Shown: piece after piece, positions 22,768 through 64,000 of the stretch
Layout of the letters: each line of letters begins with the position of its first letter
How positions within the stretch are numbered: the stretch's first letter is position 1
Virus record (IMG/VR): IMGVR_UViG_3300034158_000023
Span: 151,387 to 215,386 of that record
DNA: 64,000 nucleotides
Reading direction: 5' to 3' (one strand)
Notes under the pieces: generated by a model
What the model saw: the letters and a program-made list of their open reading frames with translations, nothing else
Told to the model about the DNA's origin: nothing
Databases searched by the model: none
Made by a program: the position numbers and the translations under genes

Positions 22768-24115
22768 ATTAGATAATGAAAGCGGGGTTGTTGATAACAA
22801 AAACCCTAATGATGCACCAGCTCCTTATCAGACGACGGCAGTAGATAACGCCTATAGTCCAGTGCGTAGTTTATTAACCCACGTAGAAGGTGCTAAGTGG
22901 GTACTGGACGATTACTTTAGCCAATACTTAGGTATGGATCAAGCAGTCGATCAACAGAACGTTAACTCAGTTGCAGTTTACCAGCAGTACTTGCGCATTA
23001 AAGAATTTGAAATGCGGGTTAGCTCACCGCTAGACATTTCATCTGATACTAGTAGCCGTGAATTCCAATTAGTTGGTTCAGCCACTATGTACCCAGGTTT
23101 CATCCCCAACAAAGGCGATATGTTTGTTGCCATGATTGGAGATGGTCGTAAAATGTTGTTTACTCTAACCGACATAGAAAAGAAAACTATGTTGTTAGAT
23201 GCGGTGTATGAAGTCAGTTACGAGAGTGTGGATTATCTAAGTCCAGACTTAGAACAAAACTTGCTGTCCAAAGTAGTTAAGACAGTAACTTTTGTAAAAG
23301 AGTTTATGGCGTTAGGTAATACCCCATTCCTAGTGGATAGTGAATACTCTACTCTAAAAGAGTTAAGAGAATGGATCCATAAATTACCATTGGAATATGT
23401 AAGAGAGTTCTTCGATGAAGAGTTCTCTACCTTCTTGATCCCAGGACAAGATAAACCAATGTACGATCCATTTATTGTGAAGTTTGCTAAAGCTACGATG
23501 TCTACTCATCAAGAACCTTTATGGGCTCGTGTGAGAGAACACAACTGCGATAACGGTAGAGACAGTGGATATACAACTATCCTAGACACTCTGTTGGAAA
23601 CCAACGAACGTGGTTTAGATTTTGTGCAGCAGTTCTTTGCGGTGTTCTTTGTTCGCGGGCAACATCGAAACACTACGTTTGGAACAGTGACGTATTCTGG
23701 TATAGATAACGTCTACTATCCTAAAGGTAATGATTCACTTGGTTACCTTAATGAGAACGTGCCATTTAAACCTTCCCCACCGCGTGAGTTTAATCGCCCG
23801 ATAGATTTAAGTATTGTTATCTCTGATACCACTCTGGAAGGGCTAACAGCACCAGACATGATTTCTGTAGACTCTATACGTCCTGTGACTGTAGATAACT
23901 ATTACATACTTTCCAAAGCGTTCTATGAGAGTGATCAGGCTAACATGTCAGCATTAGAATTGTTGTTGCATGCTACGTATTACTCAAAACCTTTATGCCA
24001 CTTCACGCTGTTGAATTTATGTAAGAAGTCGGTGTACTGGGGAGTGTTAGAACGATTCTATTACTTACCACTGTTGCAGTTCTTATTGGTGGTTTCTAAG
24101 AAGGATGTAAACTAA
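22754..24115 (+). CDS. Virion structural protein (phiKZ gp101-like)
   Basis: LLTHVEGAKWVLDDYFSQ...YQQYLRI..FEMRV motif; synteny. Confidence 0.6.
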   Translation: MPPFELDNESGVVDNKNPNDAPAPYQTTAVDNAYSPVRSLLTHVEGAKWVLDDYFSQYLGMDQAVDQQNVNSVAVYQQYLRIKEFEMRVSSPLDISSDTSSREFQLVGSATMYPGFIPNKGDMFVAMIGDGRKMLFTLTDIEKKTMLLDAVYEVSYESVDYLSPDLEQNLLSKVVKTVTFVKEFMALGNTPFLVDSEYSTLKELREWIHKLPLEYVREFFDEEFSTFLIPGQDKPMYDPFIVKFAKATMSTHQEPLWARVREHNCDNGRDSGYTTILDTLLETNERGLDFVQQFFAVFFVRGQHRNTTFGTVTYSGIDNVYYPKGNDSLGYLNENVPFKPSPPREFNRPIDLSIVISDTTLEGLTAPDMISVDSIRPVTVDNYYILSKAFYESDQANMSALELLLHATYYSKPLCHFTLLNLCKKSVYWGVLERFYYLPLLQFLLVVSKKDVN

Positions 24116-24703
24116 ATGGAATACAAATGCGAACAAGATACTCCAGCGTGGAAACTATTCCATACTGAATTTCTAGTTAGTATCCCTGCGGCTCACGTAC
24201 GATCAGCCCATGATCAAAAAGTGTTTGGCTTTGTTAGTACCGGAGATTCTGAGTACGATAAACAGTTAGCTCATGCACACACGAAAGTGTACCGGAAGAT
24301 CCCCGAGTTAGCTGAACTGTTAGATGCTGGAGTAAACCCTAACATTCTTAACCCAGATAACCAGATCCCTCGGATGACTGAGTTGATCAAAGCGCATATC
24401 CAAGAGATTGATAACTTACAAAGTGGTCGATACTCCAGGGTGCGTCCGGAGGATGAATTAGATCCTGAGGTATTGGAAGAACTCCAGTTATTGGAAAAGT
24501 TCTCTGCGTGGATGAATAAAGTCCCACGGGATGAAAAGCCTATCGACAACTCGCCAAAAGGTTACGCAGCTTATTTGCAGCGCTTCAAGCTTATGTCTAT
24601 GGGTGGCTTAGAAGGTGCTCCACCATCTGTCCCTATTAAACCGTTCACAAACGCTGACAGCGGGTTTACTAAGAAAGGACTAAGGAGAATACCTAGATGG
24701 TAG
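24116..24703 (+). CDS. Conserved hypothetical protein (195 aa)
   Basis: ORF coupled to both neighbours; synteny with the phiKZ-like core. Confidence 0.65.
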   Translation: MEYKCEQDTPAWKLFHTEFLVSIPAAHVRSAHDQKVFGFVSTGDSEYDKQLAHAHTKVYRKIPELAELLDAGVNPNILNPDNQIPRMTELIKAHIQEIDNLQSGRYSRVRPEDELDPEVLEELQLLEKFSAWMNKVPRDEKPIDNSPKGYAAYLQRFKLMSMGGLEGAPPSVPIKPFTNADSGFTKKGLRRIPRW

Positions 24704-26016
24704 TAAAAAGCCTCACAACGCATGCTGAGGTAGTTAAATCTATCCAGGCCGATACCTACCCAACTTACTTTGAATACAAGTGTCAGTTCACAGTCAATGG
24801 TTTAGTGATCGACACTTTAAAAACTGTGGAGATAGATATAGCCGAAGACTATGCGAATGGTTATGGGGCTGCTATCATAATCTCTGTGGCCATGATTTTA
24901 GATGACTACATGCAGAAGGTTTATCCTAATCGGAATGCGTTAACCTGTACTCTGGTTAAAAAGGCGGTTACAACTGGAGTTACAGCTGTAACTCCTTTGA
25001 TGTCTACTACGGTAGAGTATTCCGTGGTGCCATTAGACAACGTTGACATGGCTGCATCTGCTAAAGTTAACTTTGATGGTAAGTTAGGGATAGGAACATT
25101 TAAGTTCCAGTTGATCCCATTACCTTTAGAGAAACTTAGACTAGAAACTGTCAGTGGGGTATATCCGGAAGCCGCAGCGATTGATGTACTTAAAGTGTTA
25201 CTAGGTAATGCTACCCGTAAACGAGCTACAAACAGTTCTAACGCGTTTACTGGGTTTGCCGCTACCGAGCCACCTAAAGAGATCAAAGTAAAGCCACAGC
25301 TGATAATTAAGCCCACTAACGTGCTTGATCTACCTACGTACTTACAGAAACATTGTGGTGGTATCTACAACCATGGTATTGGTTGTTATTTCTACAATAC
25401 TTTCTGGTATATATACCCACTGTACGATTGCACTAGATACGATAGAGCAAAACGCACTTTGGATATTGCAGTACTGCCCCAACAACAAACTATCGGCATA
25501 GATAAAACTTATGCTTACGTTAACAACCGAGCATTTATTTTAATCACTGCTGAGTTCCAAGAAACAGATAACCGAGATGTAAAAATGTTAAACAAGGGTA
25601 ATGGCGTTAGGTTCTCTAATGCTACTATCATGTTTGATGAGTTTACTACTCGTGGTGGAAACAAAGCTACTACTGATATCACTAAGAACGTTTCACAGTT
25701 TGTTTTAAGTGAACGTGAAACAGGTGACCAGTATGCTCCATTCAGTGATAATGAGATTACTGATAACGTAGCGCAGGAACTGTCTAAGCTAAGTGCTAGA
25801 ATGGGGACGGAAGTAACTATGCGATGGAAGTATGCTAACCCTGATATCCTATATCCTGGGATGCCAGTCAAAGTACACTTCCCCGTAGAAGGTGGGGTTA
25901 AAGAAAGGTTAGGGGTATTGTTAGCTATACAAACATATGGCCGTACTTTACAACCAGAAATGACTGCAATGAAAGTAGGTATGGAAGTTGCATTAAAGTT
26001 ATTCTTAGCTGACTAA
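24697..26016 (+). CDS. Conserved phiKZ-like protein (gp104-like position)
   Basis: 439 aa; YLQKHCGGIYNHGIGCY motif; terminator downstream. Confidence 0.6.
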   Translation: MVVKSLTTHAEVVKSIQADTYPTYFEYKCQFTVNGLVIDTLKTVEIDIAEDYANGYGAAIIISVAMILDDYMQKVYPNRNALTCTLVKKAVTTGVTAVTPLMSTTVEYSVVPLDNVDMAASAKVNFDGKLGIGTFKFQLIPLPLEKLRLETVSGVYPEAAAIDVLKVLLGNATRKRATNSSNAFTGFAATEPPKEIKVKPQLIIKPTNVLDLPTYLQKHCGGIYNHGIGCYFYNTFWYIYPLYDCTRYDRAKRTLDIAVLPQQQTIGIDKTYAYVNNRAFILITAEFQETDNRDVKMLNKGNGVRFSNATIMFDEFTTRGGNKATTDITKNVSQFVLSERETGDQYAPFSDNEITDNVAQELSKLSARMGTEVTMRWKYANPDILYPGMPVKVHFPVEGGVKERLGVLLAIQTYGRTLQPEMTAMKVGMEVALKLFLAD

Positions 26017-26053
26017 CATAAACTGGGAGGACTGCTAGTCCTCCCATTATGCC
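26017..26053 (+). terminator. Hairpin followed by TTATGCC
   Basis: CATAA-ACTGGGAGG-ACTGCTAGT-CCTCCCA-TTATGCC. Confidence 0.65.
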
Positions 26054-26057
26054 GTGA

Positions 26058-26085
26058 CTGGAAAACTTTCTAAATATATATTGTT
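26058..26085 (+). promoter_or_regulatory. Putative early promoter
   Basis: CTGGAAAA-N11-TATATTG. Confidence 0.55.
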
Positions 26086-26087
26086 TT

Positions 26088-26124
26088 AGTAGTAAGAAAG
26101 CATAAAGCTTTCTATTCATAAAAC
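26088..26124 (+). repeat. 37-nt leader repeat with hairpin, copy 1
   Basis: AGTAGTAAGAAAGCATAAAGCTTTCTATTCATAAAAC, identical to 63062-63098; contains hairpin AGAAAGC-ATAAA-GCTTTCT. Confidence 0.9.
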
Positions 26125-26140
26125 AATAAAGGGTATTACC

Positions 26141-26230
26141 ATGAACAAATTCGAAAAGTTTGTTGAGCGCAACCAAGAAGTTCTACTGTTAATCTCTGCC
26201 GTGATTGGGTTGATGTACAAATATATTTAG
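26141..26230 (+). CDS. 29-aa small peptide with hydrophobic C-terminal half (absent from the ORF track)
   Basis: MNKFEKFVERNQEVLLLISAVIGLMYKYI; AAAGGG SD; directly behind the early promoter and 37-nt leader. Confidence 0.6.
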   Translation: MNKFEKFVERNQEVLLLISAVIGLMYKYI

Positions 26231-26301
26231 TTTAATTATATGGGAGGTAGTGCACTTAAGTGCGCACCTCCTAAACCTATATTTTTTGCCGGAGGTGTAA
26301 A

Positions 26302-26556
26302 ATGAGTAAACGTAAAGTTGAATTAAACTTCGATACTGAAGCAGGTATTCCAGATGCTGTTGCTACTGTACGCCCTATCAACGGACAAACAGAAACCGCA
26401 GTAAGAGTGTATGTCGTAGGTGAAGGTGAAGACCTAGCCGTAGAAGAATTAATAGAGGAAGTTAGACAGCAGTTATCCGCTGATGGCGTATACGTCATGA
26501 CCTCCCTTAAAATTCCAACTACTGAGACACACGCATGGAAATCTATTACCCATTAA
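26302..26556 (+). CDS. Hypothetical protein (84 aa)
   Basis: Strong GGAGGT SD 5 nt before the ATG. Confidence 0.7.
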   Translation: MSKRKVELNFDTEAGIPDAVATVRPINGQTETAVRVYVVGEGEDLAVEELIEEVRQQLSADGVYVMTSLKIPTTETHAWKSITH

Positions 26557-26780
26557 TCGCTAGACTTAAGATGACTATGCTAATCGTTGGGTTAGTATGG
26601 TCATTGGCTTATGCCGCTGTAGCGGTAGAGAAGAAAAATAAAATGATGGTCATAGAGGATGTCGTGGTAGAAGCATCATATGAAAACCATCTGTATAATA
26701 AAAGGATTTCCAATGATTCACAGCATAAATCTGACATGTACAAGAAGCAAAGAAGCAAGCCAGTATTCCATGTACATTGA
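26535..26780 (+). CDS. Hypothetical small protein; start uncertain
   Basis: ORF fills the gap between neighbours; alternative starts at MTMLIVG (signal-peptide-like) or MMVIED. Confidence 0.35.
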   Translation: MEIYYPLIARLKMTMLIVGLVWSLAYAAVAVEKKNKMMVIEDVVVEASYENHLYNKRISNDSQHKSDMYKKQRSKPVFHVH

Positions 26781-27084
26781 GTTGCCACCACTCCCTAAGC
26801 AGATCTATGATCGATCTACAAAGATGTGTATGGTAACTGTAAACGACGTTACATTCCCTTTCTCTGTCACACTACCACTAGAGAAAGATTATCTAAATCC
26901 AGAACTTGAAGCAATGCCTAAAGTTGATCTGTGGAACTTCCAATCTAAACTTAGAGAACTCAAAATACTTGCTGATGATGAATTTCTCTGCACCGTGCAA
27001 ACTGGCCTTAAGTTTAAGGAAAGGCACAAGGGTGCTAACGTTAGACCGGATGAAGCAGCTGCCATTAAATACGAATGGAACTAA
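26770..27084 (+). CDS. Hypothetical protein; track start 26680, likely start MYIELPP at 26770
   Basis: Open frame ending just before the bidirectional terminator; start uncertain. Confidence 0.5.
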   Translation: MYIELPPLPKQIYDRSTKMCMVTVNDVTFPFSVTLPLEKDYLNPELEAMPKVDLWNFQSKLRELKILADDEFLCTVQTGLKFKERHKGANVRPDEAAAIKYEWN

Positions 27085-27085
27085 A

Positions 27086-27136
27086 CGGCATAAAGAGAGA
27101 GCTTAGTGCTCTCTCTTATTTTTTTGTTTTATGCCG
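27086..27136. terminator. Bidirectional terminator; near-copy of 4792-4840
   Basis: CGGCATAAAGAGAGAGC-TTAGT-GCTCTCTCTTA-T-run-GTTTTATGCCG. Confidence 0.8.
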
Positions 27137-28676
27137 CCATATCAAACCAGCTGTCATCACGATCGTCGTTTACGCTACGACCACCTGGCTTCTTAAGGGA
27201 TAGATCTTCTCCTTTAAGATCATCTCGACAGCCCCCTGCATCAAAGAACGGCAGAACACAATAGAGATCTTTCTCTGGTGTCTGTGGCCCACTCTTACGA
27301 TGCTTACCACGCTGTAGTGTAAGGTAACTTCGCCCATTAACTTTAACGATGTGGATAAGTATCTCAATGTCAACTTCTTGGTCGATCGTCTTACAGCTAT
27401 CGTAATACCCTTTGTTGACGATTTCTTTTACAAAGTCGTCAGTACCATTACGCAACAGATATTTCGCCTCTGTTGAAATCTGATGCGGTGTAATGAAGGC
27501 TATCTTACGTGGGTTAGTAAAGTTACGTACACGACGGAACAAATCACGAGTATCTGAACCAGTTGGGCCTTGAGTACAACCTACCTTACTAAACATGTTC
27601 AGGTAGTCAACTGTGAGTAGATGGATTTCATAACCTTCTGACTCATAGAACATAATCAAGTTAAACAGTTTCTGATAGGTGAACTCAGACGGGTTAACAC
27701 GCAACATCTTAAACGCGTAACCATTGATACTAGTTTCTTCGTAAATGTACTTAGCGGCCTCCTCAGGAGTAACTGCGGTACAATCTGCCACCTCTCCTGT
27801 TCGGTTTTCTTTTAGGCTAGAATACGTTAACAGAATGTTATCTGTTAGTTGGTTCTCTGACGAGATGTGTAAGATAAGTGGTTTCTTATCTGGGTCTAAC
27901 ATATACGGTTTATTGTAAAGAGCTACCTGCTTAGTTAAGTTCAGAGTAAAACCAGTTTTATAGTTATGTTGTAGTGCACCAACAACCATAAAGTCACCAC
28001 GACGAATACCAGCATGTGATCCCAACATACGGTTCACAGCTTGATACCCAAACTGGAGCATACCTTCTAAACTCGTTTCATCTTGTGCTTCTTTAAAGAG
28101 GCCAGCTATTTCTTCCACATTAGAAAAGTCAACCTCGCCTAATACACCAGCCATACCCTTAGCACCTTGGGCATTACTTTCAACAGTGTACTTCTCAAGA
28201 TTACTTTGCATCTCAGTAGCAAAGTTGGTTACATCGATTTGTTCTGTGGTGTATAAAGCACGTTGTACGCATGATCTAATGTAGGCTTGGAAATCTCGCT
28301 GTTTAATAAAGTTCTGTATGAGCTTTGAGTACTCAAGGATCTTTTTCTTAGTTAGTTCAGGAGAGATTTCATCACCAAGTGCATCTGTAATTGCTGTATA
28401 GATATGAGTATCACTCATGCAGTTGATTTTAATTCTTTGCAATAGTGCTTGTTTATCTAATGGTTCCCCTTTGTCTAAGTCGCACATATGCAATACTGTA
28501 TGACGTAGGCCGTACAGTATTTCCTTATTGTCATCTGTCTCTAAAGTAGCCGCAGGCATTTCCATGGCCTCGACGATTTCTTTTATATGAGCTGAGCTAT
28601 CGCCTGATTTACCTAGGGCCATGTTCTCCCAATATAGTAAAGTGATGGCATGCACTAATAATAATCTCGGTTCCAT
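27129..28676 (-). CDS. dnaB: DnaB-like replicative helicase (phiKZ gp118-like)
   Basis: GIRRGDFMVVGALQHNYKTGF (Walker A variant), ISSEN, LLTVDYL (Walker B), TPHQIS, QRGKHR motifs. Confidence 0.9.
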   Translation of the reverse strand: MEPRLLLVHAITLLYWENMALGKSGDSSAHIKEIVEAMEMPAATLETDDNKEILYGLRHTVLHMCDLDKGEPLDKQALLQRIKINCMSDTHIYTAITDALGDEISPELTKKKILEYSKLIQNFIKQRDFQAYIRSCVQRALYTTEQIDVTNFATEMQSNLEKYTVESNAQGAKGMAGVLGEVDFSNVEEIAGLFKEAQDETSLEGMLQFGYQAVNRMLGSHAGIRRGDFMVVGALQHNYKTGFTLNLTKQVALYNKPYMLDPDKKPLILHISSENQLTDNILLTYSSLKENRTGEVADCTAVTPEEAAKYIYEETSINGYAFKMLRVNPSEFTYQKLFNLIMFYESEGYEIHLLTVDYLNMFSKVGCTQGPTGSDTRDLFRRVRNFTNPRKIAFITPHQISTEAKYLLRNGTDDFVKEIVNKGYYDSCKTIDQEVDIEILIHIVKVNGRSYLTLQRGKHRKSGPQTPEKDLYCVLPFFDAGGCRDDLKGEDLSLKKPGGRSVNDDRDDSWFDMAA

Positions 28677-28708
28677 ATATTTTTTTACCTAATTAAAAGG
28701 GAGTCATC

Positions 28709-29230
28709 ATGATCAATAAGAGTCATTACGTGACTATTGTACCCAAATGGTTAGCTGACCAGTTAGCGTTAGTTGGTGAAGATTTGAAGATAGTTGAAGA
28801 CTTTCAAAAACTATCCGCTATAATATCAGCAAGTGAAATAAGTTATTACTTTTTATCTATTCAAAAGCTCCGTGAATACCTTCCTGATGCGTTTGATGAT
28901 ATGCGATTGTTATCAGAAAAAAGTAATAATTTGCAATGGGTGTCTGAAAACGGTGATGTTATAGCTAAGGCAAAGTTAGAATTCGATAAAGCTTTTTATA
29001 AGGCCAAAGGAAATTTAACTAAAGATGATGTAGATCTTATAGTGAGACGCACGTCTTATAAACCTAAAGCTATTGCTGATGATACTCTAGCATTAGTTGG
29101 ATTTGATTGCGAAACCGAATACCCCTATTCGAAGTTCTTACGTGATTGTTGCGCTGAATTAAATAAACAAATATTATTTGACCAGTATAGCAACATGGAA
29201 GTGTTTCGACAATACACAAGACATGCTTAA
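28709..29230 (+). CDS. Conserved hypothetical protein upstream of the major capsid gene
   Basis: 173-aa ORF, GGGAG SD. Confidence 0.65.
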   Translation: MINKSHYVTIVPKWLADQLALVGEDLKIVEDFQKLSAIISASEISYYFLSIQKLREYLPDAFDDMRLLSEKSNNLQWVSENGDVIAKAKLEFDKAFYKAKGNLTKDDVDLIVRRTSYKPKAIADDTLALVGFDCETEYPYSKFLRDCCAELNKQILFDQYSNMEVFRQYTRHA

Positions 29231-29274
29231 TAATAGTGTGTAATTTAATTCTGACGACTCCATCGGTCGTATAG

Positions 29275-29300
29275 TATGCAGTAGTGGCCTCGGCCGTTAT
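29275..29300 (+). promoter_or_regulatory. Candidate late promoter (TATG) with 5' leader hairpin for the capsid gene
   Basis: TATG at 29275-29278 (phiKZ late consensus TATG) followed by GTAGTGGC-CTCG-GCCGTTAT stem-loop; a 4-nt motif alone is weak evidence. Confidence 0.35.
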
Positions 29301-29335
29301 TATATTCCTTAAGATTAACCTTCCAGAGGTACGTT

Positions 29336-31501
29336 ATGTCCCATTTTACACGAGTAGATCAAAGTTCAGGTCTTGGTGCTCTGTACGCAACCATTAATGC
29401 AACTCTTTCTAAACAAGCTGCGGTTGTTGCAAACGACGTTACTGCTAGAGCTGTAGCTGGTTTAGAGTCTGCTGCTATTGGCGCTCACCGCGACACTCAC
29501 AAAAACATTGAGAACATGCTGTCACAGTGTGTTACTAGCGTTCCAAGCGTCGCTGCCCCAACTTGCCACGGCTTAGAAGCTGCTGCAATCCTTGTAGCTG
29601 CATCAAGCAATCCATCTGTTTATCACGACGCCGTACGTGGTGCACAAAACATCCACGCTAAACTGCGTGAGTTCGGTCCTTTAGGTAGCGGTAACGCAGG
29701 TGCTTTAAGCTACTCTACTGGTACTGAGTCATTTGATACTCAAGAACTAGCCAAGCACACTGTACAGTCAATCACTTACACGATTGATGCCGTTCGTCAA
29801 GATGCATTAGGTGAATTGTTCTTCCCAACAATCGTAGCAACTCCAGACCAAGCTTTCTATAAAGCTTCTGTAGTTCGTCCTACGATCTTCCGCGGTATTA
29901 CTCACAGTCGTGATGGTAATCCGACCAAGTGGGAAAAGTACAACCTGTTAGACGCGTATCGTGATGCTTCTTTACTGAAGAACGATTCAACTCGTCTGAT
30001 TCCATATGCTTCATCTGAAGCAGTTGACAACTTAGCGCCTGTTTCTGAAATCGCTACAGTTAACGTTAAAGTCGGCGACTGGACTGTTCCATCACGTCCT
30101 CTGAAAATGGGTAAGAAGATTAACCTTATCGGTATCTCCATGCACCCAGATTTAGTAGCTAACGGTGTTTGTGATCAAACTGACCACATTGACCGCGCTG
30201 CACGTGTTGAAGCGTTGTATGTTAAAGTTACCAAAACTGGTAACGCTGCGCCAGCTGAGATCATCAAGTTCAACGTTTTAGGCATGCCATCAAGCAACTT
30301 CTACAAGACGCAAGAAGGTAAAGGCTACGACGCAATGCTCAAGATGACTCTGCGTTCATTGCGCCTTGACAAAAACACCAAGTCTATCTCTGGTGCAGTT
30401 CCAGCTATGTTAGCTGATTTCGTAGCAGCCAACTTAGCAGTTGACTTAGAAACTGTTGTTGACGGTGAATTGAACTTCGAACAAGGTACTGCAAACGTTC
30501 GCGGTAGCCACCTGACTCCACGTGCAATTTACGACGTGTCTTCTGATCTGGCTACTCAGTTAACTACGCATGCTTCTTTGGAAAATTTAGTATTCGAACC
30601 AGTTTACTGGGACATCGATGCTCACCTGACTAACACCAACCGTCGTACTCGCGGTACCATGTTAGACAATGACGTCTTCGAAGAAATTTACACCATCGGT
30701 TTGTTAGCTCCTATCAGCGTACAGAAGCCAGTGCACCTTACTGACAAATCTGCTGTCACTGAAGTTGAAACAGATACTCTGGTTAAAGCTACTCACGTGA
30801 TCATCAGTAACAGCGCTGTAACAACTCTGCTGAACTACTGTGAACATTTGAAATCTTTCTACCACAAAAATATCAATCACCTGCGTGCTGCATCTATCGA
30901 CGGTGAAGGTATTGAAGGTATCGGTCGTTTATTGGTAACTCCATTCTACGCCGAAGCTGAAATCGACTTAGTTGAAGTAATCAACTCATTGACTTCAACT
31001 GATAAGATGAGCGACTTACGTGGTTACTTCACTGGTTTCATCACTGAACTCGGTTACCGTATGGCTCAACGTTCTGGTTACTTGCCTGTGTTACGTCAGT
31101 ACACTAACAACCCAGAAGCTACGCCTACACTACTGATCGGTACTGACCAAGTGTTGCCACAGTTCATGATGATCAATGGCGATCCACGTGCTGTCGGTCC
31201 TACTCTGAAGCATGAGATCGCATCAAGCCCAGATGACCGTATGGTTGGTGAAATCATCCTTAGCTTCGGCAAGGTAGATGACAAGAACTTCTGTCCTCTG
31301 AACTCTGGTAACATGATCTGGATTCCAGAGTGGATTTCTACAATCCCAGTAAACCGCGGTGGCGCTACTGTGAATGAAACTTGCGTACAACCACGTTTCC
31401 GTCACGTGATCAACTTACCAATCTTCGCACGTATCAAAGTTACTAACCTTGATAAGTACTTAGGTACTAAGATGAACATCGCTTACAAAGAAGTCGTTTA
31501 A
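29336..31501 (+). CDS. Major capsid protein (phiKZ gp120-like)
   Basis: 721 aa, N-terminal propeptide with GLE/GTE|SF sites, RQDALGELFFPTIV and NTNRRTRG motifs, strong codon bias, adjacent to DnaB as in phiKZ. Confidence 0.9.
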   Translation: MSHFTRVDQSSGLGALYATINATLSKQAAVVANDVTARAVAGLESAAIGAHRDTHKNIENMLSQCVTSVPSVAAPTCHGLEAAAILVAASSNPSVYHDAVRGAQNIHAKLREFGPLGSGNAGALSYSTGTESFDTQELAKHTVQSITYTIDAVRQDALGELFFPTIVATPDQAFYKASVVRPTIFRGITHSRDGNPTKWEKYNLLDAYRDASLLKNDSTRLIPYASSEAVDNLAPVSEIATVNVKVGDWTVPSRPLKMGKKINLIGISMHPDLVANGVCDQTDHIDRAARVEALYVKVTKTGNAAPAEIIKFNVLGMPSSNFYKTQEGKGYDAMLKMTLRSLRLDKNTKSISGAVPAMLADFVAANLAVDLETVVDGELNFEQGTANVRGSHLTPRAIYDVSSDLATQLTTHASLENLVFEPVYWDIDAHLTNTNRRTRGTMLDNDVFEEIYTIGLLAPISVQKPVHLTDKSAVTEVETDTLVKATHVIISNSAVTTLLNYCEHLKSFYHKNINHLRAASIDGEGIEGIGRLLVTPFYAEAEIDLVEVINSLTSTDKMSDLRGYFTGFITELGYRMAQRSGYLPVLRQYTNNPEATPTLLIGTDQVLPQFMMINGDPRAVGPTLKHEIASSPDDRMVGEIILSFGKVDDKNFCPLNSGNMIWIPEWISTIPVNRGGATVNETCVQPRFRHVINLPIFARIKVTNLDKYLGTKMNIAYKEVV

Positions 31502-62404: not shown

Positions 62405-62989
62405 ATGTGGGAGCTATCTAACCCACCTATTGATATACGCGTAAGGTTACTAGCGATCGACCCAGGTTCTACTACGTTAGGGTTTGCTTTAATGTTGATA
62501 GATCCGGTGCTGAAACAAATAACTGTGGGTGATGCATTCACTCTAAACGTGGGGCGTGGAGTTAACACACACTCCTTACGATTTGAGCAGTATGGGGCTA
62601 AAGCTGAAAGGTTACATCAGATCTACATGAATATGGGTTCTGTACTGTATCAACTACAACCTCATTTGTTTATAGCAGAGTCTCCATTTGTCGGAAGATT
62701 CGCAGCAGCATTTGAAGCATTGGTGGAAGTTAGAGATGCTCTTAAAGCAGCTCTGTGGGCTCATGATCCTACTATGATCTATGAGTCTGTAGATCCACTG
62801 ACGGCAAAAAAAGCAGTTGGAGCTGCTGTCTATAAGGGTTCTAAAGAAAACGTCAGGGATAGCGTTATAGCTCTACCTGATTTAATCTGGGCACCTAACG
62901 TACTGAAGTATGAATTAGATGAGCACTCTATAGACGCGGTTGCTGTTGGTTACTGTCGAGCCATAGGTTTCTTACGTGATGGTTATTAG
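62405..62989 (+). CDS. ruvC: RuvC-like Holliday junction resolvase
   Basis: LLAIDPGSTTLG, FIAESPF, AKKAVG and HSIDAVAVG catalytic D/E/D motifs. Confidence 0.85.
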   Translation: MWELSNPPIDIRVRLLAIDPGSTTLGFALMLIDPVLKQITVGDAFTLNVGRGVNTHSLRFEQYGAKAERLHQIYMNMGSVLYQLQPHLFIAESPFVGRFAAAFEALVEVRDALKAALWAHDPTMIYESVDPLTAKKAVGAAVYKGSKENVRDSVIALPDLIWAPNVLKYELDEHSIDAVAVGYCRAIGFLRDGY

Positions 62990-63013
62990 GAGGCTTCGGC
63001 CTCCTTTTTATGC
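62988..63013 (+). terminator. Intrinsic terminator with TATGCC tail
   Basis: AGGAGGC-TTCG-GCCTCCT, then TTTTATGCC. Confidence 0.8.
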
Positions 63014-63031
63014 CCCTATTGTAAAGAATGG

Positions 63032-63059
63032 CTGGAAAAGATTGTAGATATATATCCTC
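63032..63059 (+). promoter_or_regulatory. Putative early promoter
   Basis: CTGGAAAA-N11-TATATCCTC. Confidence 0.6.
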
Positions 63060-63061
63060 AA

Positions 63062-63098
63062 AGTAGTAAGAAAGCATAAAGCTTTCTATTCATAAAAC
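63062..63098 (+). repeat. 37-nt leader repeat with hairpin, copy 2
   Basis: Identical to 26088-26124. Confidence 0.9.
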
Positions 63099-63116
63099 TA
63101 TAAAAGGATACACGAC

Positions 63117-63557
63117 ATGAACAAAACTTATATTGATACATTAAAAAGCATTATGGCTGCACATGCTGCTAATAAGGAGAAAGAAATAGAAAGTGCTTTC
63201 CCATCCGATTTGGACGCAATGTATGTACGTCGCGAAGCCATGCTGGATACGATTAATCTTCGTTGCAAAGACTGGGAATCAGATAAACTAGAAATTGAGG
63301 CTAAAGATTATTCTTACGCCTTTGGACTATTTGTAAAACACTTAAACGGTGCCGTATGCAAATACCAAGCTGCATTAATAGCTTTCTTAGATTTACACGA
63401 AGCTGCACTAACGGCAGAGGTGAAAGATAGTATTACAGTACCAGAGGACATACTTAAGTTCTTAGAGTTTGCTAGGCACATATTGGAAGCATCCCAAATA
63501 AAACCCCTAATCCAACACGGTATAGACTTTGGTAAATTAAGTCAAGCCGACGAATAA
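63117..63557 (+). CDS. Hypothetical helical protein; paralog of 63582-63977
   Basis: AAAAGGA SD; full-length similarity to the next ORF. Confidence 0.7.
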   Translation: MNKTYIDTLKSIMAAHAANKEKEIESAFPSDLDAMYVRREAMLDTINLRCKDWESDKLEIEAKDYSYAFGLFVKHLNGAVCKYQAALIAFLDLHEAALTAEVKDSITVPEDILKFLEFARHILEASQIKPLIQHGIDFGKLSQADE

Positions 63558-63581
63558 AATTCAGTAACTGGAGTACCTAGC

Positions 63582-63977
63582 ATGAACAATCAATACAGCG
63601 TTACATTTAAAGCCGTCCAAGAAAAGCATGCAGCAGTAATGGCAAAACTAAATGACCATGAATACGTCGCTTGTCTAGAGGCTATGCACGAAGTTAAAGG
63701 TGCAATGATCAATGCACTTAATGAACGTTGCGTGTACTGGGAAAATGAACAAACAGTGTACTTTGATAATGGTGTTCAAGTAACCAAACCAAAGGAATAC
63801 TTAAAGGCATTGCATACCTTCATTAACGACGTTAATGCAATCGTAGCAAAATACAATCGTGACGTGCAACGTTTCATCGATGAGTTTGAAAACAATATGT
63901 CGGCTGAAGACAAATTGTTCTTTGTGGTACCACAGGATATCGTGGACTTTTTGACGGTTTGTAAAACTTACGTCTAA
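63582..63977 (+). CDS. Hypothetical helical protein; paralog of 63117-63557
   Basis: GGAG SD; shared AM...N.RC..WE and VP.DI..FL motifs. Confidence 0.7.
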   Translation: MNNQYSVTFKAVQEKHAAVMAKLNDHEYVACLEAMHEVKGAMINALNERCVYWENEQTVYFDNGVQVTKPKEYLKALHTFINDVNAIVAKYNRDVQRFIDEFENNMSAEDKLFFVVPQDIVDFLTVCKTYV

Positions 63978-64000
63978 GCCCTTCGGGGCTTTTTTTTTTT
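63976..64000 (+). terminator. Intrinsic terminator
   Basis: AAGCCC-TTCG-GGGCTT followed by a T run to the window end. Confidence 0.8.

What the first reader, a model, noticed from the sequence alone, without database searches (positions are those of the whole stretch)
26058..26149. Identical 37-nt hairpin leader cassette behind early promoters at two loci 37 kb apart
Seen: AGTAGTAAGAAAGCATAAAGCTTTCTATTCATAAAAC occurs exactly at 26088-26124 and 63062-63098. Each copy follows CTGGAAAA-N11-TATAT and precedes ATAAA(A/G)GG..ATGAACAAA, yet the downstream genes are unrelated (a 29-aa peptide versus a 146-aa helical protein). The repeat folds as AGAAAGC-ATAAA-GCTTTCT. A partial third copy (CTATATAAAACCATAAAAGGAAA) precedes the 1355 gene. 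Established analogy: promoter-stem-loop cassettes (PeSLs) of T4-like phages drive expression and recombinational shuffling of accessory genes. Inference: this is a portable promoter-leader-RBS module for accessory genes in a nucleus-forming phage, or a 5'-UTR signal for mRNA handling or export.
Basis: partly seen in the sequence, partly recalled or inferred. Interest (0 to 1): 0.65.

Follow-up and report, generated by a model that had tools for sequence, protein, structure and literature searches.

The report
Early promoter cassette with conserved leader hairpin
A 74-base switch-on module (phage early promoter, a hairpin predicted at the very start of the RNA, and a ribosome-binding site) occurs three times in this nucleus-forming jumbo phage and in its relatives, with an almost invariant hairpin, and the genes placed directly behind it differ from one relative to the next.

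Summary
The repeat is real. The genome (215 kb, circular, chimallin-encoding) holds three copies, not two; the third lies outside the window.

The promoter and ribosome-binding parts are generic: about 17-19 promoters of one class (TCGAAA/TGGAAA-like, ~12 nt, TATATATTAyC, 6 nt, purine), matching published virion-RNA-polymerase early promoters. The cassette differs only by a leader about 22 nt longer. It carries a 7-bp hairpin that starts at predicted +5.

A 26-nt core is identical in nine copies from three lineages (A, B, C). A and B are only about 69% identical at third codon positions. A fourth lineage keeps both arms but changes the loop and the arm spacing.

Gene content differs directly behind the cassette, cassette copies are mosaics, and relatives' assemblies break there.

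Other early leaders, including chimallin's here and in phiKZ-type phages, are predicted to begin with hairpins of unrelated sequence.

Best reading: a portable early-expression module whose hairpin acts in the RNA, by 5'-end protection or recognition. No start site was measured and no covariation was seen. It is analogous to T4 PeSLs, not a member. New variant of a known kind; interest 0.6.

The parts
26025..26055 (+). Terminator of the upstream 439-aa gene: a GC stem-loop (26025-26045) followed by TATGCCGT (26048-26055).
   Evidence: About 18 intergenic copies of 'GC hairpin + TATGCCGT' in the genome. It matches the published phiKZ terminator motif ending in TTATKYYGT (PMC10914365).
26057..26130 (+). 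Cassette copy 2, the unit shared by all copies.
   Evidence: Contigs from the copy-1 and copy-3 loci of relatives X5 and X2 align to exactly 26057-26130. Alignment A2.
26057..26065 (+). Upstream promoter element ACTGGAAAA (ACTCGAAAA in lineages B, C and D).
   Evidence: Same position and type as the TCGAAA, TCCAAA or TGCAAA element of the other class promoters.
26077..26084 (+). -10-like octamer TATATTGT, within ATATATAT.
   Evidence: Class consensus TATATATTAyC. Compare the AR9 early consensus AAATATATATTAT-(6N)-G (PMC5312081).
26091..26091 (+). Predicted transcription start (A), 6 nt after the octamer. Not measured.
   Evidence: A purine sits at this position in 17 of 17 class promoters. The rule comes from AR9, phiKZ and phiR1-37.
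26089..26114 (+). Core of 26 nt, GTAGTAAGAAAGCATAAAGCTTTCTA, identical in 9 of 10 aligned copies.
   Evidence: No variant in the relatives X5 and X2.
26095..26113 (+). Leader hairpin AGAAAGC / ATAAA / GCTTTCT, predicted +5 to +23.
   Evidence: Folds at -8 to -10 kcal/mol. All 7 pairs are invariant, so there is no covariation.
26125..26143 (+). Shine-Dalgarno block AATAAAGGG, spacer and ATG.
   Evidence: Generic ATAAAAGG block of the genome.
26141..26230 (+). 29-aa peptide gene with a hydrophobic C-terminal half, conserved in lineages A to D.
62988..63005 (+). Terminator stem-loop after the RuvC-like gene.
63031..63104 (+). Cassette copy 3: GCTGGAAAA 63031-63039; octamer 63051-63058; predicted +1 at 63065; core 63063-63088; hairpin 63069-63087.
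63117..63977 (+). Genes driven by copy 3: a 146-aa ORFan (63117-63557) and its 131-aa tandem paralogue (63582-63977).
   Evidence: 30% identity, E 8e-18. No Pfam or PHROG family. A divergent paralogue in L028 and a remnant in L027.

Best explanation
The element is an early-gene expression cassette of a chimallin-encoding jumbo phage.

Parts, in order:
1. A promoter of the class read by the virion RNA polymerase: ACT(G/C)GAAAA, about 12 nt, then ATATATAT.
2. A predicted start 6 nt after the -10 octamer.
3. A leader that begins 5'-AGUA followed by a 7-bp stem-loop.
4. An AU-rich spacer.
5. The genome's standard Shine-Dalgarno block.

Proposed mechanism. The hairpin acts in the RNA. As a structure at the 5' end it protects or marks the transcript, either by blocking 5'-end-dependent decay or by being bound by a factor. 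The ORF placed behind it would then get strong or lasting early expression. The 74-nt unit is shared by three loci, so it also supplies homology for recombination. The slot behind it gains, loses and swaps accessory genes.

Shown here: the anatomy, the copy number, the conservation, the mosaicism and the gene turnover.

Inferred: the timing class, the start site, the RNA-level action and the stabilising effect.
For: Promoter class:
- About 17-19 sites share the architecture.
- One drives chimallin, a known early gene (PMC12908238). Another precedes an ORF holding an RNAP beta-like domain.
- The motif and the purine at N6+1 match the published early promoters of AR9, phiKZ and phiR1-37 (PMC7598289).
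- There is no consistent sigma70 match.

Leader:
- The distance from the -10 element to the SD is 43-45 nt in the cassette, against 19-26 nt in most generic members.

Constraint:
- The core is identical in 9 of 10 aligned copies, from lineages A, B and C. A and B are only 68-70% identical at third codon positions. Flanking segments average 46-60% identity.
- The chance that 26 neutral sites stay identical in one A-B pair is about 0.69^26, or 6e-5.

RNA rather than duplex DNA:
- Lineage D keeps both arms but changes the arm spacing from 7 to 6 nt. A hairpin tolerates this more easily than a dimer operator would.
- Unrelated hairpins start at predicted +1 in other early leaders (p4117, p126071, p82447).
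- The p4117 closing pair changes from G-C to G.U in L022.
- Chimallin leaders of phiKZ, HPP-Temi and pEa_SNUABM_54 also start with stable hairpins of unrelated sequence.

Portability:
- Three unrelated genes, or none, lie between the cassette and the conserved peptide gene at copy 2.
- At copy 3 there is paralogue turnover and two different deletions.
- Mosaic copies exist.
- Five contig ends of relatives fall inside or immediately after the cassette (L017, L018, L026, L029, L032). Contig lengths of 64,185 and 36,667 bp are close to the inter-cassette distances of 64.8 and 37.0 kb.
Against: - No transcription start, timing or half-life was measured. The putative RNA libraries behaved like DNA.
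- There is no compensatory change in the stem. The invariant loop and arms fit sequence-specific recognition, and a perfect palindrome could equally be a DNA site.
- The hairpin starts at predicted +5. Four unpaired nucleotides are, from my memory of the E. coli literature, near the limit for 5'-end protection.
- Enrichment of 5' structure among early leaders holds only against composition-matched shuffles (P 0.002-0.009). It fails against random genome 30-mers (P 0.3-0.8).
- Deletion breakpoints lie in the promoter spacer or at the RBS, not in the 37-nt repeat.
- The invariance could be helped by gene conversion between copies.
Confidence: 0.55

Rival explanations
1. The inverted repeat is a duplex-DNA operator. 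A dimeric phage protein binds AGAAAGC-N5-GCTTTCT at +5 to +23 and shuts off, or activates, just these three early promoters.
For: It is a perfect 7+7 palindrome. Arms and loop are invariant, with no covariation. Its position just downstream of the predicted start would suit a roadblock.
Against: Lineage D changes the arm spacing by 1 bp and loses the inner pair yet keeps the arms. Other early leaders, including chimallin leaders in distant phages, carry hairpins of unrelated sequence at the same place. That would need a separate protein for each.
Confidence: 0.17
2. The hairpin has no function of its own. The repeat is kept identical by gene conversion among three paralogous promoter regions and is only a recombination substrate.
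For: Copies are mosaics. The variant after the hairpin groups by genome rather than by position: TTCAT occurs in our copies 2 and 3 only.
Against: Conversion would homogenise the flanks as well, yet the discriminator, the segment after the hairpin and the SD-ATG spacer vary while the core does not. The arms persist in lineage D, whose flanking 439-aa protein is only 67% identical to ours.
Confidence: 0.1
3. The hairpin is a conditional attenuator or a processing site. It yields a short 5' RNA, like the 5'UTR-derived RNAs reported in phiKZ.
For: phiKZ has 17 candidate 5'UTR-derived short RNAs made by premature termination (PMC10914365).
Against: The stem is AT-rich and has no U-tract. This genome's terminators are GC hairpins followed by TTATGCCGT or a T-run. 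There is no Rfam match.
Confidence: 0.08

Closest known systems
Early (virion RNA polymerase) promoters of RNAP-encoding jumbo phages (phiKZ, AR9, phiR1-37)
   Same: A conserved AT-rich element of about 10 nt near -10, and a purine start 6 nt downstream. It lies in front of early genes such as chimallin, and there are about 17-19 copies per genome.
   Different: The cassette adds a near-invariant hairpin leader repeated at three loci. I found no description of such a leader element in the papers read. The AR9 paper mentions an unexplained motif in early 5' UTRs.
PeSLs, the promoter-early stem-loop cassettes of T4-type phages (PMC2839356, PMC4122927)
   Same: Short repeated regulatory modules in front of ORFans. 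Insertions, deletions and replacements between close relatives occur at them. Homology between copies allows recombination.
   Different: PeSLs have a sigma70 promoter and a GC-rich terminator stem-loop, and occur in many copies inside hyperplastic regions. Here the promoter is phage-type, the stem-loop is transcribed, AT-rich and downstream of the promoter, and there are three distant copies. The ordinary intergenic layout of this genome (terminator followed by early promoter) resembles a PeSL more than the cassette hairpin does.
5'-terminal stabilising stem-loops of bacterial and phage mRNAs (for example the ompA leader).
   Same: A stable hairpin within the first few nucleotides of the transcript, well upstream of the SD and not occluding it.
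   Different: Such stabilisers need structure only. Here the sequence, loop included, is almost invariant. The start site and any effect on half-life are untested.
Hairpin promoters of phage N4 virion RNA polymerase (PMC4496689 was listed but not read). This comparison rests on my own knowledge.
   Same: An early promoter used by an injected polymerase, associated with a short inverted repeat.
   Different: The N4 hairpin lies upstream of the start and is part of promoter recognition by a single-subunit enzyme. Here the repeat lies downstream of the predicted start, and most promoters of the class lack it.

Membership tests
Jumbo-phage vRNAP early promoter class | Conserved AT-rich element of about 10 nt, over-represented upstream of operons. 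| tested here: met
   TATATATTAyC-type element at about 17-19 sites. The k-mers are enriched 10-14 fold in upstream regions.
Jumbo-phage vRNAP early promoter class | Transcription start 6 nt downstream of the element, usually G or A. | tested here: inconclusive
   A purine sits at N6+1 in 17 of 17 sites, but no 5' ends were measured.
Jumbo-phage vRNAP early promoter class | The phage encodes multisubunit RNAPs, and the element precedes known early genes. | tested here: met
   PF00562 and PF00623 hits. A class promoter lies in front of chimallin.
PeSL (T4-type) | Strong sigma70-like early promoter with an AT-rich upstream region. | tested here: not met
   Only a 9/12 match at copy 2, no better than the shuffles, and none at copy 3.
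PeSL (T4-type) | The stem-loop is a GC-rich terminator or attenuator for upstream transcription. | tested here: not met
   The cassette hairpin is AT-rich, has no U-tract and lies after the promoter. Separate terminators exist upstream of copies 2 and 3 but not copy 1.
PeSL (T4-type) | Many copies clustered in hyperplastic regions. | tested here: not met
   Three copies, at genome 112.6, 177.4 and 214.4 kb.
PeSL (T4-type) | Insertions, deletions and replacements between close relatives at the cassettes; recombinant cassettes. | tested here: met
PeSL (T4-type) | Mini-circles formed by recombination between cassettes. | not testable with these tools
   Needs inverse PCR on infected cells.
5'-terminal mRNA stabiliser stem-loop | The hairpin begins within a few nucleotides of the 5' end. 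| tested here: inconclusive
   Predicted +5 for the cassette and +1 for p4117, p126071 and p82447. The start is not mapped.
5'-terminal mRNA stabiliser stem-loop | Pairing, not sequence, is what matters (compensatory changes tolerated). | tested here: inconclusive
   No variation in any pair. Lineage D loses one pair.
Intrinsic terminator or attenuator | GC-rich stem followed by a U-tract or the phage's TTATGCCGT tail. | tested here: not met
Any Rfam family | Score at or above the family's gathering threshold. | tested here: not met
   The best hit scores 18.5 bits against a threshold of 80.

The most novel reading that the evidence does not exclude
The near-invariant 5' hairpin is a cis-acting tag read by a phage factor. 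It would direct a subset of virion-polymerase transcripts, and the analogous hairpins would direct chimallin mRNA, for export from the early infection vesicle or for protected, privileged translation. That would make it the first mRNA address signal described in a phage.
Probability: 0.15. Interest if true: 0.85.

Novelty: new variant of a known kind. Interest (0 to 1): 0.6.

Why it matters
Early transcripts of nucleus-forming phages are made inside a closed vesicle and must reach the ribosomes. How this happens is an open question (PMC12908238).

This cassette offers a short, near-invariant element at the predicted 5' end of the RNA, repeated at three loci. Analogous hairpins are predicted on chimallin leaders in several chimalliviruses. 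Together these give a concrete element to mutate and to use as bait.

The cassette also marks where this phage group swaps accessory early genes. That is where host-takeover and anti-defence genes are usually sought. It would also serve as a compact early-expression part for engineering such phages.

Tried and rejected
- Exact and relaxed pattern scans of IMG/VR and of JGI metagenomes found no relative. The hits L004-L014 and L037-L039 were chance matches. L013 and L014 lack the head protein.
- GenBank phages hold no cassette match.
- The search for related loci with three proteins found nothing.
- Whole records behind the Logan and NCBI loci could not be searched.
- Pfam, PHROGs and the Atlas gave nothing for the cassette-driven ORFans.
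- Rfam gave nothing.
- Runs labelled RNA were reported as 'probably DNA' and showed no molecule starts.
- The supplementary start-site tables for phiKZ are not held. The phiKZ gp054 start is therefore predicted here, not read from data.
It was redone from coordinates.
- A sigma70 reading of the promoter was rejected.
- The 'partial third copy' at the 1355 gene was rejected.
- I first took the hairpin + TATGCCGT element for part of the promoter or a phiKZ-like late TATG promoter. It is better explained as the known phiKZ-type terminator.

Full report
**1. Observation**

The 37-nt string is present exactly at 26088-26124 and 63062-63098. No shuffle of the window gives a match. Both copies sit between CTGGAAAA-N11-TATAT and an ATAAA(A/G)GG..ATGAAC start.

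The window is the last 64 kb of a 215,386-bp viral record. Its ends overlap by 127 nt, so it is a circular assembly. The whole genome holds exactly three copies of the module, all on the + strand. The third is at genome 112628-112712, outside the window.

The "partial third copy" before the 1355 gene shares only ATAAAAGGA with the cassette. That block occurs 53 times in the genome, 43 of them intergenic by my rough gene calls. It is not a copy.

**2. What phage this is**

- The window encodes a phiKZ-type major head protein and a DnaB-like helicase.
- The genome has split RNA polymerase beta- and beta'-like pieces.
- It has a chimallin gene at genome 126143-127972 (PF25677 at 108 bits; phrog_4795).

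So it is a chimallin-encoding, and therefore presumably nucleus-forming, jumbo phage. Sequenced isolates are only distant relatives.

**3. The promoter and the ribosome site are generic**

I made rough gene calls and surveyed the upstream regions. One promoter class has about 17-19 members. Its layout is:

- often a GC hairpin plus TATGCCGT;
- a TCGAAA, TCCAAA, TGCAAA or TGGAAA element;
- about 12 nt;
- (G)TATATATTAyC;
- 6 nt, then a purine;
- a short leader;
- (A/T)ATAAAAGGA, 5-8 nt, then ATG.

Reviews state that every RNAP-encoding jumbo phage has an AT-rich motif of about 10 nt near -10 in front of its early operons (PMC7598289). AR9 early promoters read AAATATATATTAT-(6N)-G. In phiKZ and phiR1-37 the start also lies 6 nt after the element (PMC5312081).

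Members of the class here drive chimallin, a known early gene (PMC12908238), and an ORF containing an RNAP beta-like domain. A sigma70 scan finds only a 9/12 match at copy 2, no better than the shuffles, and nothing at copy 3.

I therefore take the class to be the early, virion-polymerase promoters. This rests on analogy; nothing was measured.

The hairpin + TATGCCGT element matches the conserved phiKZ terminator motif ending in TTATKYYGT (PMC10914365).

**4. What is special about the cassette**

In most generic members the -10 element lies 19-26 nt from the AAAAGG of the ribosome site. In the cassette the distance is 43-45 nt. The extra sequence is the hairpin.

By the 6-nt rule the start is the A at 26091 (63065 in copy 3). 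The transcript would begin AGUA, followed by the 7-bp stem AGAAAGC/GCUUUCU with loop AUAAA, at +5 to +23.

**5. Relatives**

IMG/VR, JGI metagenomes and GenBank phages hold no copy. Public runs from 13 studies in varied habitats do hold near relatives.

I used homologues of the RuvC-like gene (upstream of copy 3) and of the 439-aa gene (upstream of copy 2) to fetch contigs. They fall into these lineages:

| Lineage | Loci |
|---|---|
| A | ours, L024, L027, L028 |
| B | L017, L025; L018, L026, L029 |
| C | L019, L030 |
| D | L031 |
| E | L032 |
| more distant | L020-L023 |

Lineages A and B are 86% identical in these genes and only 68-70% identical at third codon positions.

**6. Conservation**

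Ten cassette copies were aligned (A2). The -10 block is invariant. The 26-nt core GTAGTAAGAAAGCATAAAGCTTTCTA is identical in the nine copies from lineages A, B and C.

Neighbouring segments are far more variable:

| Segment | Mean pairwise identity |
|---|---|
| Promoter spacer | 71% |
| Discriminator | 60% |
| Segment after the hairpin | 59% |
| SD-ATG spacer | 46% |

For one A-B pair, 26 neutral sites would stay identical with a probability of about 0.69^26, or 6e-5. Two further relatives, X5 and X2, show variants at 26066 and 26125 but none inside 26088-26124.

Lineage D's flanking 439-aa protein is 67% identical to ours. It keeps GTAGTAAGAAAG and CTTTCTA, but the middle reads ATAATA. The result is a 6-bp stem with a 6-nt loop.

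No pair shows a compensatory change. Pairing as such is therefore not demonstrated for this hairpin.

**7. Other 5' hairpins**

With the same start rule, three other early leaders begin with a hairpin at +1:

- p4117: GATATAG/ACTTAA/CTATATC.
- p126071, the chimallin leader: 8 bp.
- p82447: 5 bp.

The p4117 hairpin keeps its sequence in the distant lineages L020 and L022, while its flanks differ. Its closing pair changes to G.U in L022 and is lost in L020.

Statistically, early leaders are more structured at the 5' end than composition-matched shuffles (P 0.002-0.009). They are not more structured than random genome 30-mers, because leaders are AT-rich. This support is modest.

A broader sample helps. 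A TATATTAC-like element, then 6 nt, then a purine was found upstream of chimallin in six of eight phages.

- **Strong hairpin at +1:** this phage, phiKZ (11-bp stem, record position ~45582), HPP-Temi and pEa_SNUABM_54. The z-scores run from -2.5 to -3.4. The sequences are unrelated across the three independent lineages; phiKZ and HPP-Temi are related to each other and their leaders share parts.
- **Weaker hairpins:** RP31 and Noxifer.
- **By eye only:** Xoo-sp14 shows a similar layout, with a poorer -10 match.
- **None found:** LucasX.

The phiKZ gp054 gene has a mapped primary start linked to the early motif (PMC8244752). I could not read its coordinate.

**8. Gene turnover at the cassettes**

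Copy 2:

- In our genome and in lineage C, the cassette is fused directly to a conserved 29-31-aa peptide gene.
- Lineage A2 (L024) has a 143-aa gene in between.
- Lineage B has a 46-aa ORF plus more sequence in between.
- Lineage D has a 112-aa gene in between.
- None of these inserted genes is similar to another.

Copy 3:

- Our genome has two paralogues (30% identity).
- L028 has a divergent paralogue.
- L027 keeps only CTGGAAAAGAG, joined to the 3' remnant of a paralogue.
- L019 keeps CTGGAAAAGTTTCT, joined to other sequence.
- L020-L023 have no cassette.

Mosaics:

- L024 copy 2 and L025 copy 2 combine the copy-2 promoter half with a leader that matches their lineage's copy 1 up to the ATG.
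- Our copies 2 and 3 alone share TTCAT after the hairpin.

Assemblies of relatives:

- They end inside or immediately after cassettes (L017, L018, L026, L029, L032).
- Two contigs of 64,185 and 36,667 bp are close to the inter-cassette distances of 64.8 and 37.0 kb.

The deletion breakpoints lie in the promoter spacer or at the ribosome site, not in the 37-nt repeat.

**9. Mechanism**

I favour an RNA-level role for the hairpin at the 5' end of an early transcript, either protection from 5'-end-dependent decay or recognition by a factor. The cassette as a whole would then be a portable early-expression module (confidence 0.55). The near-invariant loop and arms point to recognition of sequence, not only of shape.

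Rivals:

| Rival | Confidence |
|---|---|
| Duplex-DNA operator | 0.17 |
| Repeat maintained only by gene conversion | 0.10 |
| Attenuator or short-RNA source | 0.08 |

**10. Comparison with known systems**

The promoter belongs, by sequence criteria, to the jumbo-phage early promoter class.

The cassette works like a T4 PeSL in heading ORFans and marking sites of gene exchange. It fails three of the PeSL's defining features: a sigma70 promoter, a terminator stem-loop, and many clustered copies (PMC2839356 and PMC4122927). It is an analogue, not a member.

I did not find a description of conserved 5'-terminal hairpins on early jumbo-phage leaders in the papers read. The literature search was limited.

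**11. Verdict**

This is a real, conserved, three-copy element and a new variant of known kinds. Interest 0.6.

Noticed in passing
G000:C1:126071-126145 (locus L033:72-146); also L042:3560-3651 (phiKZ), L043, L044, L040, L047: The chimallin early leader is predicted to begin with a hairpin at +1 in this phage, phiKZ, HPP-Temi and pEa_SNUABM_54. RP31 and Noxifer show weaker versions. The sequences are unrelated across the independent lineages, which points to structure-level conservation.
   Followed up: partly
window 26025-26055, 62988-63015 and about 16 other intergenic sites in the genome: A GC hairpin followed by (T)TATGCCGT, on both strands at gene ends and often preceded by GCATA. It matches the conserved phiKZ terminator motif ending in TTATKYYGT.
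   Followed up: partly
window 26141-26230: A 29-aa peptide gene with a charged N-terminal half and a hydrophobic C-terminal half. It is conserved at 29-31 aa in lineages A to D, so it is a real small gene of unknown function.
   Followed up: partly
G000:C1:4117-4178 (L034); L027:11209, L020:13724, L022:13996: A second leader hairpin, GATATAG-ACTTAA-CTATAT, is identical, loop included, in lineages with saturated synonymous divergence. It sits in front of a 290-aa ORFan.
   Followed up: partly
G000:C1:17541-17610 and 83981-84060 (outside the window): Another two-copy repeat: TATATAAAGAGAGAT.., then GGGAGGGGATAAACCCTCCC, then GTTAT, upstream of two genes.
   Followed up: no
window 63117-63977: A tandem pair of diverged paralogues (30% identity). 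The family varies in copy number among close relatives, and L027 holds a 3' remnant.
   Followed up: partly
window 63874-64000: The last 127 nt repeat genome positions 1-127. This is the assembly overlap of a circular contig, not a biological terminal repeat.
   Followed up: yes
window 24000-30000: Near relatives (30-63% of 31-mers shared) occur in 13 studies from peat, biofilm, gut, food, wastewater, freshwater and groundwater. One run is filed under an organism name and may hint at the host.
   Followed up: no
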